IMG/VR virus record: IMGVR_UViG_3300028610_001064
Location: 1-19,436 of that record
Direction: 5' to 3' (one strand)
Length of the DNA stretch: 19,436 nt
This document shows positions 1 through 19,436 of this stretch, piece by piece. How positions within the stretch are numbered: position 1 is the stretch's first letter; the number at the start of each line of letters is the position of its first letter. The notes under the pieces were generated by a model. It had not been told where the DNA came from, made no database searches, and worked only from the letters and a program-made list of their open reading frames with translations. The position numbers and the translations under genes were made by a program.

Positions 1-144
1 GAAGACACCATCTACTTAGTAAAAGAGAAATAATTTCTCAATCCTACCCAGACAGATAAGGTTGAACACTTCAGCCGAAAGTACCTAGTTCTTGTTTGAT
101 TCGTTCAACCCTCACCTTATTATTAATCATTAGCAGACTTCACT
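1..144 (+). repeat. Terminal direct repeat, left copy (144 bp)
   Basis: 1-144 is identical to 19293-19436, indicating a circular or permuted complete genome (probably assembly overlap). Confidence 0.97.
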
Positions 145-3992: not shown

Positions 3993-4418
3993 ATGACAAA
4001 TACAAAAGTTAGTGAAGTATCTGAAGGAGGAGTAGCATTAGGAGAAAACAAATTTGCGGAAGGACAAATAATTGACGAGGCAGTTAAGGCGGGAGAGATT
4101 GTGGAATTGACCGCAGAGGGACACGTAGTTCTATGTAATGGAACTGATGGAGTATTTTTAGGAGTAGCGAAAGAACACGAAGAATTTGATCTTGATACCG
4201 ATATTACGTCTGGAAAAAAAATAGATGTAATCACCGAAGGATATGCGGTAGTATTCCTTTGCGATATTAATCAAACTTATTATGCCGGTGAATTCTTTTA
4301 TTGTCATTACGATACACCTGGAAGTTTAAGAAATACTGCCAATGGACATCCAGCTGCGAAATTACTGAGAACTATTAATTCAGGCGATACCGTAGCCATA
4401 GTTAAACTCATGAGGTAA
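3993..4418 (+). CDS. Capsid decoration/cement protein (putative)
   Basis: 141 aa immediately before the MCP; AVKAGEIVEL...VFLGVA...SGKKIDVITEG pattern typical of small beta-tulip cement proteins. Confidence 0.7.
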   Translation: MTNTKVSEVSEGGVALGENKFAEGQIIDEAVKAGEIVELTAEGHVVLCNGTDGVFLGVAKEHEEFDLDTDITSGKKIDVITEGYAVVFLCDINQTYYAGEFFYCHYDTPGSLRNTANGHPAAKLLRTINSGDTVAIVKLMR

Positions 4419-4423
4419 TCATC

Positions 4424-5374
4424 ATGGTAGAAATTAGAGGTGTTACTGAAAGAGAATGGAAGGGAATTGATAAACAAGTAGCTCAATTAATGCGGGAGCC
4501 AATTGTATATCGGAATCTTCCTAGTGGTATGCAAATAGGGAAAGGAAAAAACAAAGCGGAGTATTATCAAGCAACCGATGTCTTTTATGTGAATGAAGGT
4601 AAAAGATTTGCGTATGAAGATCGAAATATCGGAGCCCGAAAAACAAGAGATAACGCAATTACTTATCTAACATTGCCAATTCACGTTGATGAGAAGGATA
4701 TTGATGCTTCCAGTGGTGAGGGTATCACTCCTGTATTAGTAGCACATGAAATTGAGTGCAGAGCAAAGATGCAAGAAAGAATTCAGAAAGTAGTGCTTCA
4801 TGGAAGCACTCATTCCGGAGGACGGGGAATATGTACCTTTCAACAAGATGAGGAGACAACCTATGCTTTTGCGGCAGCTGGGGGAGCTTGGAGTACTACT
4901 GGTAATTTCTTCACAGATTTAGAATCCGCAAGAGCCCTTTTAAGAGCAGCTCACATACAACCACCCTATAAATTATGGATGACTCCAGGAATTCAACCCG
5001 ATCTAAGAAAAGTCTTTCATGCTACAAGTGGTCAATCCGATTGGAGAACCTTTTTACAAGATTATATGCAATATGGTGTAATCTCAGGTGAAGCGGGAAA
5101 GCAACCATTTGTCCCGCAAATTGATCAAGTTATAGAAACTGATTCACTTTATAACGGAACATTAGGCGTGGCAACTCAAGCTTTTCTATTATGGAAGGAC
5201 GATGTTAATAGTAATTATATAGCAGAATCCTATCAAGTCCATAGAGCCAATATTCCAAATAAACCATTTGAGGGTGATGTAGATTATGCTATTCGATGGG
5301 CGGGATGTTTCATTCCTAAGAATCCTAAGGGTGCTGTCTATTGTCACACTGGAACCACAACTACAGCATATTAA
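4424..5374 (+). CDS. Major capsid protein, HK97 fold, encapsulin/linocin-like
   Basis: N-terminal EREWKGIDKQV..LMREPIVYRNL, VVLHGS..GGRGI and ARALLRAAHIQPPYKLWMTP resemble family-1 encapsulin motifs; synteny; GAGGT RBS. Confidence 0.85.
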   Translation: MVEIRGVTEREWKGIDKQVAQLMREPIVYRNLPSGMQIGKGKNKAEYYQATDVFYVNEGKRFAYEDRNIGARKTRDNAITYLTLPIHVDEKDIDASSGEGITPVLVAHEIECRAKMQERIQKVVLHGSTHSGGRGICTFQQDEETTYAFAAAGGAWSTTGNFFTDLESARALLRAAHIQPPYKLWMTPGIQPDLRKVFHATSGQSDWRTFLQDYMQYGVISGEAGKQPFVPQIDQVIETDSLYNGTLGVATQAFLLWKDDVNSNYIAESYQVHRANIPNKPFEGDVDYAIRWAGCFIPKNPKGAVYCHTGTTTTAY

Positions 5375-5389
5375 GAATAATATCTAAAT

Positions 5390-5420
5390 AGTCGTAGAGA
5401 AGCGACTCTAAATTTTTTTT
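5390..5420 (+). terminator. Hairpin plus T8 tract after the MCP gene
   Basis: AGTCG(T)-AGAGAA-(G)CGACT stem followed by TTTTTTTT at 5413-5420. Confidence 0.55.
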
Positions 5421-5434
5421 ATTCTCAAAACAAT

Positions 5435-5505
5435 GGACCTGATAGGTGTTTTAAGCCTTAGTTAGATTTGGCTTTTAGAAGGTTCGATTCCTTCCAGGAC
5501 CACCA
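5435..5505 (+). ncRNA. tRNA-like RNA (acceptor stem, T-arm and CCA; no D-stem)
   Basis: GGACCTG pairs with CAGGACC (6 of 7, A3-A70 mismatch); T-arm GAAGG-TTCGATT-CCTTC; ends A-CCA; central AAGCC/GGCTT stem. Confidence 0.75.
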
Positions 5506-5558
5506 ATAAAAATTAAAAAAATGTTCATAAAAAAATAAAAAAGATGTGATAAAAAAAA

Positions 5559-5939
5559 ATGACCAATGAAACAGATTTAAGAGAAATTTCTGCTCAAATT
5601 GAACTTGTGAAACAATTACTTGGACCTGAGACTTTTGATCTTGATAAAACTTTAATAGAACTTGAAACTAAAAAAAAACTTTTAATGACATTCAAGCCAA
5701 GAAGTTATGCTACAATCCTTAAAGGTTTAGAATCGGGAGAACTTATACATCCTGGAGAATGGGTAAAACCCCCTGAAGAGAAAAAAGTAATAAAAAAACC
5801 AGAAAAACCCAAGATCGATAAGAAGGCACTTGCTTTAGAGAAAGAGACTATAGAGCTTATAGTAGATAAAGAACTCTTAGAGAAAAATAAATTAATAGAA
5901 GATAAGAAAGCAGAATTGGCAAAGTTATTAGGTGAGTAA
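5559..5939 (+). CDS. Hypothetical protein, charged and coiled-coil
   Basis: 126-aa ORF in the structural arm; no recognisable motif. Confidence 0.75.
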   Translation: MTNETDLREISAQIELVKQLLGPETFDLDKTLIELETKKKLLMTFKPRSYATILKGLESGELIHPGEWVKPPEEKKVIKKPEKPKIDKKALALEKETIELIVDKELLEKNKLIEDKKAELAKLLGE

Positions 5940-5941
5940 TC

Positions 5942-6325
5942 ATAGCAGCCGCAGGATATGGAGATGCAGGAATAGGGCAGAGTATCTGGTCGGCTACATG
6001 GGATGGAACCCAATTCGGTCATATTAATAAGCTGATTGGGACGGAGTTTAATTTCTATATTACGGAAGATGGAGCGACGGATATTACAGATCCAAAAGTC
6101 ACCTCAATGCTAGCAGCTCAGACTCATAAACTATTTGGTAGATGGAATGCCATAGTTAAGAGTTCAGCGGTCCATAATCCCTGGGATTTCATCAATGTAT
6201 TACTGTCGAAAATGGATTTTGAACGGGAGTTTAGGAGTGTTATAAGAAAAGCCCGGAAGATATTAGAATTAAATATAACAGAATTGAGTGGGACCTTCAC
6301 CTTTGGAGTGAGAAATAATGAGTAA
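5942..6325 (+). CDS. Putative head-tail adaptor, probable ATA start (extends track ORF 6107..6325)
   Basis: Frame is open from 5936; RBS AGGTGA 7 nt upstream of ATA 5942; gives 127 aa (MAAAGYGDAGIGQSIW...) and fills an otherwise empty gap. Function from synteny only. Confidence 0.6.
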   Translation: MAAAGYGDAGIGQSIWSATWDGTQFGHINKLIGTEFNFYITEDGATDITDPKVTSMLAAQTHKLFGRWNAIVKSSAVHNPWDFINVLLSKMDFEREFRSVIRKARKILELNITELSGTFTFGVRNNE

Positions 6326-6491
6326 AACAGAAAAAGCAAAAATATCAACACCAAAACAACAAACCGATTTGATGGCATTAGATTCTATTATTAAGGGTCT
6401 TGCTAATCAAATAAAGAACTATCAACAAATAATTAAAAATACATTAGTTACTAAACAAGCACTACAATCAATAAGGAAGAGGTTGTTATAA
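6318..6491 (+). CDS. 57-aa hypothetical protein (not in ORF track)
   Basis: GGAGTGA RBS; MSKTEKAKISTPKQQTDLMALDSIIKGLANQIKNYQQIIKNTLVTKQALQSIRKRLL; TAATG overlap with the next gene. Confidence 0.7.
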   Translation: MSKTEKAKISTPKQQTDLMALDSIIKGLANQIKNYQQIIKNTLVTKQALQSIRKRLL

Positions 6492-19199: not shown

Positions 19200-19325
19200 A
19201 TGATGTCTGAAACTATAGCAAAAGAATTCCTAGAGAAGAAAGAAATATTCAACTCATTAGGGTTTGAATTAGTAGGGACTAAAGACATTAATGAAGACAC
19301 CATCTACTTAGTAAAAGAGAAATAA
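19200..19325 (+). CDS. 41-aa hypothetical protein (not in track)
   Basis: MMSETIAKEFLEKKEIFNSLGFELVGTKDINEDTIYLVKEK; reads into the terminal repeat. Confidence 0.55.
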   Translation: MMSETIAKEFLEKKEIFNSLGFELVGTKDINEDTIYLVKEK

Positions 19326-19436
19326 TTTCTCAATCCTACCCAGACAGATAAGGTTGAACACTTCAGCCGAAAGTACCTAGTTCTTGTTTGATTCGTTCAA
19401 CCCTCACCTTATTATTAATCATTAGCAGACTTCACT
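19293..19436 (+). repeat. Terminal direct repeat, right copy (144 bp)
   Basis: Identical to 1-144. Confidence 0.97.

What the first reader, a model, noticed from the sequence alone, without database searches (positions are those of the whole stretch)
5435..5505. D-armless tRNA mimic in the structural operon directly after the capsid gene
Seen: 71 nt with a 7-bp acceptor stem (A3-A70 mismatch), a perfect T-arm (GAAGG-TTCGATT-CCTTC), discriminator A and encoded CCA. The D region is an unpaired 11-nt stretch (ATAGGTGTTTT), and the anticodon-like arm (AAGCC/GGCTT) closes 12 nt that include a possible GT-TAG-AT loop. It follows a hairpin and T8 tract and is flanked by A/T tracts. Known: acceptor stem plus T-arm is what RNase P, RNase Z, CCA-adding enzyme and elongation factors read, and the tmRNA tRNA-like domain also lacks a D-stem. 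Inference: not a normal decoding tRNA. It may be an mRNA processing signal that sets capsid-to-tail stoichiometry, a decoy for host anticodon nucleases, or a packaging-associated RNA.
Basis: partly seen in the sequence, partly recalled or inferred. Interest (0 to 1): 0.75.

Follow-up and report, generated by a model that had tools for sequence, protein, structure and literature searches.

The report
Decaying tRNA-like insert in Asgard virus
A 71-base sequence with the outer shape of a tRNA but no usable anticodon sits after the capsid gene of one Asgard-archaeal tailed virus; 15 related viruses lack it and one holds only a fragment, so it is most likely a decaying captured tRNA gene rather than a conserved regulatory device.

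Summary
Window 5435-5505 has a 7-bp acceptor stem with one A:A mismatch, a perfect T-arm with a TTCGATT loop, discriminator A and an encoded CCA. It follows a hairpin and T8 tract after the capsid gene. Acceptor, T-arm and NCCA together arose in 9 of 2000 shuffles.

The window is a complete verdandivirus genome, a tailed virus of Asgard archaea, so bacterial assumptions do not apply.

ARAGORN at default settings and Rfam call no tRNA or tmRNA. Only the 3' 30 nt resembles any annotated tRNA. The middle folds two almost equally stable ways. One has no D-arm. The other is a cloverleaf whose anticodon loop has only 4 nt. Neither can decode.

Fifteen distinct relatives (capsid 73-90% identical) have an empty site. 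Only an identical second assembly carries the element. One relative, L144, holds a 43-nt remnant of the same cassette. The hairpin and T-run upstream are conserved in all 12 sequences aligned, with compensatory changes.

Best reading: a strain-limited, tRNA-derived cassette that is decaying. Interest is modest.

The parts
4424..5374 (+). Major capsid protein gene (HK97-like) of a verdandivirus
   Evidence: It is 73-80% identical to proteins that NCBI names as the major capsid proteins of Lokiarchaeia virus VerdaV1 and VerdaV4 and Thorarchaeia virus VerdaV2. There is also a weak Linocin_M18 hit.
5390..5407 (+). Conserved hairpin directly after the capsid stop codon
   Evidence: It is present in all 12 aligned verdandivirus sequences. 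Three of its 7 pairs show compensatory changes.
5413..5420 (+). T8 tract, the likely archaeal oligo-T termination or attenuation signal
   Evidence: A run of T7-T9 is conserved in every relative. Oligo-T acting as an archaeal terminator is established knowledge and was not tested here.
5430..5434 (+). Left end of the inserted cassette (ACAAT)
   Evidence: It is shared only with the L144 remnant and is absent from the other relatives.
5435..5441 (+). Acceptor stem, 5' strand (GGACCTG)
   Evidence: It forms six Watson-Crick pairs with 5495-5501, with A3:A70 unpaired.
5442..5452 (+). Linker, or D region (ATAGGTGTTTT)
   Evidence: It is unpaired in fold A. In fold B, 5444-5447 pair with 5455-5458 as a 4-bp D-stem.
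5453..5474 (+). Central hairpin: AAGCC/GGCTT closing 12 nt (fold A), or AGUUA/UGGCU (5460-5464 with 5469-5473) closing the 4-nt loop GAUU (fold B)
   Evidence: The two folds score -17.0 and -16.6 kcal/mol. This sequence occurs nowhere else in the window.
5478..5494 (+). T-arm (GAAGG / TTCGATT / CCTTC)
   Evidence: It is a perfect 5-bp stem with a canonical T-loop. It is the only exact GGTTCGATTCC in the window.
5495..5505 (+). Acceptor stem 3' strand, discriminator A and encoded CCA
   Evidence: Read directly. The 3' 30 nt is the only part that matches annotated phage tRNAs, at 90% identity.
5506..5527 (+). A-rich tail of the cassette, ending in TGTTCA
   Evidence: It aligns with the tail of the 43-nt L144 remnant. 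The combined pattern of T-loop plus tail is unique to this contig in IMG/VR.
5559..5939 (+). First gene downstream of the capsid gene (126 aa, function unknown), preceded by the Shine-Dalgarno-like GATGTGA at 5543-5549
   Evidence: The ORF is listed. The leader and start are conserved in relatives. It has no Pfam or PHROG match.

Best explanation
The element is the remains of a tRNA gene cassette, about 98 nt long: ACAAT, the tRNA-like body, then an A-rich tail ending in TGTTCA. The cassette was inserted into a variable intergenic spot of a verdandivirus, between the conserved hairpin and T-run after the capsid gene and the leader of the next structural gene.

In this virus the outer half of the tRNA survives: acceptor stem, T-arm, discriminator A and CCA. 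The D and anticodon regions no longer form a decoding tRNA. In the cloverleaf reading, the anticodon loop is cut to 4 nt and the D-loop lacks the GG pair.

The element is therefore not a decoder and not a core part of verdandivirus gene regulation.

Inference only: if read-through from the capsid gene or a local promoter transcribes it, the intact acceptor/T-arm minihelix would still be a substrate for host RNase P, tRNase Z and the CCA-adding enzyme. It could then incidentally cut the transcript between the capsid and tail genes.
For: **It derives from a tRNA and is not a chance match.**
- Acceptor, T-arm and NCCA occurred together in 9 of 2000 shuffles.
- A cloverleaf-compatible middle arose in 1.2% of shuffles.
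- The 3' 30 nt matches tRNA 3' ends in GenBank phages at 90% identity.
- The antisense Rfam hit is to a plastid motif whose consensus I read as the antisense of a tRNA 3' half (my reading).

**It does not decode.**
- ARAGORN at default settings and Rfam give nothing.
- Only relaxed or mitochondrial ARAGORN modes force a 'Thr(agt)' fold, and that fold contains mismatches.

**It is limited to one strain.**
- Fifteen distinct relatives, with capsid identity of 73-90%, have an empty site.
- Scans of IMG/VR and of JGI metagenomes with element-specific patterns returned only this genome and a 100% identical second assembly, L168.

**It is decaying.**
- L144 holds a 43-nt remnant at the same site. 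It shares the ACAAT left end, a GTTCAATTC T-loop fragment and the A-rich tail.
- The alignment score of that remnant was reached by 0 of 2000 full shuffles. It was reached by 1.15% of shuffles when the flanks were held fixed.

**The conserved regulatory feature lies elsewhere.** The upstream hairpin and T-run are conserved, with compensatory changes.

**Literature.** The founding verdandivirus preprint never uses the word tRNA (doi 10.1101/2021.07.29.453957; search counts).
Against: - The outer 35 nt (both acceptor strands, the T-arm and ACCA) carry only one defect, while the middle 36 nt has lost every canonical tRNA landmark. That is not what uniform neutral decay predicts. It could mean the minihelix is under selection, or that the donor was already non-canonical.
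- The two stems of the cloverleaf reading are still fully paired.
- Homology with the L144 remnant rests on short, partly low-complexity matches (p about 0.01 with flanks fixed).
- No donor tRNA was identified.
- No expression data exist.
Confidence: 0.55

Rival explanations
1. It is a functional RNA-processing or stabilising element. The tRNA-shaped RNA is cut out by host RNase P and tRNase Z. This would define the 3' end of capsid read-through transcripts or the 5' end of the tail-gene mRNA, much as mascRNA does for MALAT1 or tRNA punctuation does in mitochondria.
For: - The acceptor/T-arm minihelix and CCA are intact while the rest has degenerated.
- There is no T-run between the element and the next gene, so any transcript that enters the element runs on into 5559-5939.
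- The element sits exactly at the boundary between the capsid gene and the tail genes.
Against: - It is absent from 15 relatives, which manage with only the hairpin and T-run.
- It is deleted down to a fragment in L144.
- The T8 tract upstream should stop most transcription before it reaches the element.
- The tRNA-like fold is not the predicted minimum-energy fold.
Confidence: 0.2
2. It is a decoy or sponge for host factors that bind tRNA, such as tRNA-cleaving defence nucleases, toxins or modification enzymes.
For: The only support is the tRNA-like outer shape and the viral setting.
Against: - No anticodon loop is available to mimic a nuclease target.
- It occurs in a single lineage.
- There is no obvious strong promoter, and it lies downstream of a T8 tract.
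Confidence: 0.07
3. It is a non-canonical tRNA that can still be charged or can still decode. Candidate anticodons are UAG in a GUUAGAU loop, or AGU in the D-armless ARAGORN fold.
For: - The GUUAGAU loop has U33 and A37 in the right places.
- ARAGORN in mitochondrial mode returns a D-loop tRNA-Thr(agt).
- A covariance model built from GC-rich tRNA-Leu-like viral elements with reduced D-arms scores the element at 38.9 bits. Canonical tRNAs with the same acceptor stem score 18-31 bits.
Against: - That model's family was found with a search pattern derived from this element, so the score is partly circular.
- Every anticodon-stem register has mismatches or U:U pairs.
- It lacks the long variable arm that, from established knowledge, archaeal LeuRS requires.
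- It has no G18G19 pair and carries the A3:A70 mismatch.
- CTA is an ordinary codon here, 64 of 397 Leu codons.
Confidence: 0.05
4. It is a recombination site: an attP-like tRNA fragment for integration into a host tRNA gene, or a landing pad or scar of a small mobile element or satellite.
For: - Only the 3' 30 nt is tRNA-like by sequence.
- The 25-nt 3' end is identical to tRNA-Val genes of DPANN archaea.
- Another verdandivirus, L140, carries a tRNA 3'-half-like fragment elsewhere in its genome.
- The site is an indel hot spot.
Against: - No integrase or recombinase was detectable, and the literature considers verdandiviruses lytic.
- The 5' acceptor strand and a cloverleaf-compatible middle are also present.
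- The identical 25-mers also occur in unrelated bacterial contigs (a gammaproteobacterial tRNA-Val(CAC) gene and a Bacteroidetes contig), so they are consistent with coincidence.
Confidence: 0.05

Closest known systems
Virus-encoded tRNA genes and tRNA pseudogenes in tailed viruses (small, patchily distributed cassettes)
   Same: It is a compact insert of about tRNA size in an intergenic spot, with a strain-specific distribution. The 3' half matches tRNA 3' ends.
   Different: The host is an Asgard archaeon, and the founding verdandivirus preprint does not mention tRNA. The element fails every tRNA detector at default settings. The anticodon arm is not usable.
tRNA-like domain of tmRNA (Rfam RF00023)
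   Same: Both have an acceptor stem plus T-arm with CCA and, in one reading, no D-stem. A GG lies in the single-stranded linker.
   Different: It has A3:A70 rather than G3:U70, and no GGxUUCGAC or GGAC motifs. It gets no Rfam tmRNA score and has no room for a tag reading frame. From established knowledge, archaea lack tmRNA/SmpB.
mascRNA (MALAT1 3' end) and the tRNA-like TMERs of murine gammaherpesvirus 68 (recalled from the literature, not tested here)
   Same: These are non-decoding, tRNA-shaped RNAs with a reduced anticodon arm. They lie within or next to abundant transcripts and are processed by RNase P and tRNase Z.
   Different: Those elements are conserved and their processing has been shown by experiment. 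This one is a singleton with no expression data.
D-armless mitochondrial tRNAs of metazoa
   Same: ARAGORN in mitochondrial mode folds the element as a D-loop tRNA. It has an 11-nt D-replacement loop and a 3-nt variable region.
   Different: The setting is not mitochondrial. The forced anticodon stem contains a C:A mismatch, and position 37 is U.

Membership tests
Canonical tRNA (Rfam RF00005 / ARAGORN) | 7-bp acceptor stem with a discriminator base | tested here: met
   Six of 7 Watson-Crick pairs, with A3:A70 unpaired; discriminator A; encoded CCA.
Canonical tRNA (Rfam RF00005 / ARAGORN) | 5-bp T-stem with a 7-nt T-loop of the form TTCRANN | tested here: met
   GAAGG / TTCGATT / CCTTC.
Canonical tRNA (Rfam RF00005 / ARAGORN) | D-arm with conserved G18G19 in its loop | tested here: not met
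   The only possible D-stem, AGGU/GCCU, closes the loop GUUUUAA, which has no GG. That stem also competes with the central hairpin.
Canonical tRNA (Rfam RF00005 / ARAGORN) | 5-bp anticodon stem closing a 7-nt loop with U33 and a purine at position 37 | tested here: not met
   The clean stems close loops of 12 nt or 4 nt. The 7-nt registers need mismatches.
Canonical tRNA (Rfam RF00005 / ARAGORN) | Detection at standard thresholds | tested here: not met
   ARAGORN finds 0 genes. Rfam finds nothing at gathering scores and no tRNA hit at E<=10.
tmRNA / tRNA-like domain | G3:U70 alanine identity pair | tested here: not met
   The pair is A3:A70.
tmRNA / tRNA-like domain | Match to the Rfam tmRNA models | tested here: not met
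   The only hit is an 8.7-bit match of beta_tmRNA to the T-loop. Phage elements that keep only the tRNA-like domain score 47-65 bits under the same model.
tmRNA / tRNA-like domain | A host with SmpB and trans-translation | not testable with these tools
   The host is inferred to be an Asgard archaeon. That archaea lack tmRNA/SmpB is established knowledge.
Conserved cis-regulatory or processing element of verdandiviruses | Present at the same locus in related genomes | tested here: not met
   Fifteen relatives have an empty site. One has a 43-nt remnant and one has an unrelated insert.
Conserved cis-regulatory or processing element of verdandiviruses | Cleavage by RNase P and tRNase Z, giving discrete RNA ends | not testable with these tools
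   No expression or biochemical data are available.
tRNA-fragment attachment site (attP) | An integrase or recombinase encoded by the virus | tested here: inconclusive
   Pfam and PHROGs find none. However, most verdandivirus proteins have no recognisable relatives.
tRNA-fragment attachment site (attP) | Identity to the 3' end of a host tRNA gene | tested here: inconclusive
   The 25-nt 3' half is identical to tRNA-Val genes of DPANN archaea, and also occurs in two unrelated bacterial contigs. No Asgard genome matched.
GC-rich viral tRNA-Leu-like elements with reduced D-arms (unnamed; L068, L069, L127-L129) | Score under a covariance model built from the family | tested here: inconclusive
   The window scores 38.9 bits, against 18-31 bits for canonical tRNAs with the same acceptor stem. 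Most of the family was collected with a pattern derived from the window element, so part of the score is circular.

The most novel reading that the evidence does not exclude
The element is a live, non-decoding, tRNA-shaped RNA of an Asgard-archaeal virus. Selection keeps its acceptor/T-arm minihelix and CCA intact while the anticodon arm is free to degenerate. Host RNase P, tRNase Z or the CCA-adding enzyme acts on it, either to cut and stabilise the capsid/tail transcripts or to titrate a tRNA-binding host factor.
Probability: 0.2. Interest if true: 0.6.

Novelty: new member of a known kind. Interest (0 to 1): 0.3.

Why it matters
In the literature searched, no tRNA or tRNA-like gene is reported for verdandiviruses. 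These viruses encode no replication or transcription machinery and depend fully on their Asgard hosts.

Even a decaying tRNA cassette shows that these viruses capture translation-related genes, and it marks an intergenic hot spot for small inserts.

If the intact minihelix turned out to be processed, it would give a simple handle on Asgard RNase P and tRNase Z activity on viral transcripts.

As it stands, it is a singleton with no evidence of function. Its value is mainly for annotation and evolution.

Tried and rejected
**Detectors and similarity searches**
- ARAGORN at default settings and with introns allowed finds nothing. Very relaxed settings give spurious intron-containing or tmRNA-like calls, which I rejected.
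- Rfam at gathering scores and at E<=10 gives only an antisense hit to a plastid motif that I read as the antisense of a tRNA 3' half.
- blastn of 4400-6400 against GenBank phages gives no match. blastn of the element alone matches only through its 3' 30 nt.

**Looking for a donor**
- The exact 3'-half pattern hit five species genomes: DPANN archaeal tRNA-Val genes and unrelated bacterial contigs.
- Only about 10 of the 25 positions are free to vary, so I treat these matches as coincidence and not as a donor.

**Looking for more copies**
- Five patterns were run in IMG/VR and one in JGI metagenomes.
- They returned only this genome and its identical twin.
- The pattern was swamped by ordinary tRNA-Leu(UAA) genes.

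**tmRNA-like reading**
- Rejected, because the host is archaeal, G3:U70 is absent and there is no model score.
- The short GCC...UAG reading frame in the central hairpin was seen by eye and discarded as chance in A/T-rich sequence.

**Covariance model of similar GC-rich elements**
- It gives a significant-looking hit, but the result is partly circular.

**Insertion signatures**
- The flanks share only 3-4 nt repeats (CAAT, AATG), which are too short to interpret as a target-site duplication.
- The 9-nt repeat TGGACCTGA at 5434 and 5621 is compatible with chance.

**Other checks**
- Codon usage shows no special demand for CUA or ACU.
- The sigma-70 promoter scan was not used, because the host is archaeal.

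Full report
**What is there.**
- The acceptor stem is GGACCTG/CAGGACC with an A3:A70 mismatch.
- An 11-nt linker follows, then an AAGCC/GGCTT stem around 12 nt, then three bases.
- The T-arm is perfect: GAAGG-TTCGATT-CCTTC.
- The element ends with discriminator A and CCA.
- It sits in the 184-nt gap between ORF 4424-5374 and ORF 5559-5939, downstream of a hairpin (5390-5407) and a T8 tract (5413-5420).
- A T-arm, an acceptor stem with at least 6 of 7 pairs, and NCCA arose together in only 9 of 2000 dinucleotide-preserving shuffles of the window. The tRNA resemblance is therefore not chance.

**What the window is.**
- ORF 4424-5374 is 73-80% identical to proteins that NCBI names as the HK97-like major capsid proteins of Lokiarchaeia virus VerdaV1 and VerdaV4 and Thorarchaeia virus VerdaV2.
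- TerL and the portal protein lie upstream.
- The contig is IMGVR_UViG_3300028610_001064. It has a 144-nt terminal overlap, so it is a complete genome of about 19.3 kb.
- Verdandiviruses are tailed viruses assigned to Asgard archaea by CRISPR spacers. They are considered lytic and encode no replication or transcription proteins (doi 10.1101/2021.07.29.453957). That text never mentions tRNA.
- The archaeal host changes the frame of reference. Sigma-70 promoters and tmRNA/SmpB do not apply, and oligo-T is the usual archaeal terminator (established knowledge).

**Is it a tRNA?**
- ARAGORN finds no gene in the window.
- Rfam finds nothing at gathering thresholds.
- At E<=10 Rfam finds no tRNA or tmRNA match on the plus strand beyond an 8.7-bit T-loop hit. 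The best hit, at 22 bits, is an antisense match to a plastid motif whose consensus I read as the antisense of a tRNA 3' half.
- blastn against GenBank phages matches only bases 42-71, at 90% identity to the 3' ends of assorted tRNAs.
- With the acceptor stem and T-arm held fixed, the middle 36 nt has two nearly equal folds.
- The other fold is a four-arm cloverleaf at -16.6 kcal/mol. It has a 4-bp D-stem AGGU/GCCU and a 5-bp stem AGUUA/UGGCU closing only 4 nt.
- The middle is not unusually stable (z = -1.1). A cloverleaf in canonical register, however, arose in only 1.2% of shuffles. That points to descent from a real cloverleaf.
- In that reading the layout is that of a 71-nt class I tRNA with three bases missing from the anticodon loop and no GG in the D-loop.
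- Relaxed or mitochondrial ARAGORN modes force a 'Thr(agt)' fold with mismatches.
- No reading gives a usable anticodon arm.

**Relatives.** I examined the same locus in 17 distinct related sequences. Sources were IMG/VR (L002-L006) and contigs that encode capsid homologues (L137-L144, L292-L299).
- Fifteen have an empty site. The capsid stop codon is followed by the hairpin, a T7-T9 run, AATTCTCA, a conserved A/T-rich spacer of about 35 nt, a Shine-Dalgarno-like GATGTGA or AGGTGA, and the start codon.
- In the 12 sequences aligned, the hairpin is conserved, and three of its seven pairs show compensatory changes. The hairpin and T-run, not the tRNA-like element, are the conserved feature that could attenuate transcription after the capsid gene.
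- Element-specific pattern scans of IMG/VR and of the JGI metagenome collection found the element only in this contig and in a 100% identical, rotated assembly (L168).

**A remnant in L144.** L144 (capsid 78% identical) has 43 extra bases at exactly this site.
- Aligned to the window, this insert shares three things: the ACAAT left end, a GTTCAATTC segment matching the T-loop, and the A-rich tail ending in TGTTCA. About 47 nt of the tRNA 5' part and part of the 3' acceptor strand are deleted.
- No full shuffle out of 2000 reached the alignment score. With the flanks held fixed, 1.15% of shuffles did.
- I read this as a deletion derivative of the same cassette of about 98 nt. The cassette is therefore older than this one genome, patchily distributed, and dispensable in at least one lineage.
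- VerdaV2 (L137) has an unrelated, strongly folding hairpin of about 85 nt at the same spot (z = -3.2). The site is an indel hot spot.

**Best explanation and its weak point.** The simplest account is a captured tRNA-gene cassette that is decaying. It is non-decoding, limited to one strain, and not part of conserved verdandivirus regulation.
- The weak point is that decay is uneven. The outer 35 nt have one defect, while the middle has lost every landmark.
- That leaves room for selection on the minihelix, or for a donor that was never canonical.
- There is no T-run between the element and the next gene. Any RNA polymerase that passes the T8 tract would therefore make a transcript carrying the element upstream of the tail genes.
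- Host RNase P, tRNase Z and the CCA-adding enzyme read mainly the acceptor stem and T-arm (established knowledge). Cleavage there is plausible but is inference only.
- I give the functional-processing rival 0.2, a decoy 0.07, a chargeable or decoding oddity 0.05 and an att-type site 0.05.

**Comparisons.**
- The tmRNA analogy fails on defining features: no G3:U70, no model score, an archaeal host.
- The 25-nt 3' half is identical to tRNA-Val genes of DPANN archaea. The same 25-mer also occurs in a gammaproteobacterial tRNA-Val(CAC) gene and in a Bacteroidetes contig. With only about ten free positions, this is compatible with coincidence and names no donor.
- A group of GC-rich viral elements (L068, L069, L127-L129) has a similar layout and an ACUUARAN loop. 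ARAGORN calls one member tRNA-Leu(taa).
- A covariance model of that group scores the window element at 38.9 bits, against 18-31 bits for ordinary tRNAs with the same acceptor stem. Most of the group was collected with a pattern taken from the window element, so membership is inconclusive.

**Verdict.** The structural interpretation is largely right, with the caveat that a D-stem is possible. This is a new member of a known kind: a virus-borne tRNA-derived relic, here in an Asgard virus. Interest is modest.

Noticed in passing
L016, L028, L034, L045, L062 and about 15 more IMG/VR loci (e.g. L045:4277-4358): Many viral contigs carry elements of 67-79 nt with the layout: GGGCCTG, a GGxTTCGAC-like motif, a short hairpin, GGAC, a T-arm, then CAGGTCC-A, with G3:U70. 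The Rfam tmRNA model matches five of them end to end at 47-65 bits, with the roughly 300-nt mRNA/pseudoknot region missing. ARAGORN calls none of the five. They look like tmRNAs that keep only the tRNA-like domain. Two literature searches found no description of them.
   Followed up: partly
L068:3591-3663, L069:2880-2951(-), L127:3747-3818(-), L128:7474-7545(-), L129:8938-9008(-): This is a GC-rich family of tRNA-like genes of about 72 nt. They have G3:U70, a reduced D region, covarying inner stems and a conserved ACUUARAN loop containing UAA or UAG. ARAGORN calls L129 and the identical L131 tRNA-Leu(taa) and misses the others.
   Followed up: partly
L137:5210-5350 (Thorarchaeia virus VerdaV2): A different insert lies at the same post-capsid site. 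It is a long imperfect hairpin of about 85 nt (MFE -35.7 kcal/mol over 156 nt, z = -3.2) with no tRNA features.
   Followed up: partly
L140 minus strand, about 3994 down to 3900: This is a tRNA 3'-half-like fragment: a GAGGG-TTCGAAT-CCCTC T-arm plus an acceptor-like strand. It lies inside a called 122-aa gene of another verdandivirus and could be an att-type fragment.
   Followed up: no
window 1-144 and 19293-19436: The two ends of the contig share an identical 144-nt terminal overlap. The contig is therefore a complete circularly assembled or terminally redundant genome of about 19.3 kb.
   Followed up: yes
L145:2503, L156, L166 (JGI metagenome contigs): These are compact tRNA-like genes of about 67 nt with a CTCTAAA loop (anticodon CUA), a weak anticodon stem and encoded CCA. 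They may be amber-suppressor or pyrrolysine-type tRNAs.
   Followed up: no
window 5434-5442 and 5621-5629: An exact 9-nt direct repeat, TGGACCTGA, links the 5' end of the element to a site inside the downstream gene. Part of this motif (GGACCTGA) is also present in relatives that lack the element (seen in L004 and L006). This is probably chance.
   Followed up: partly
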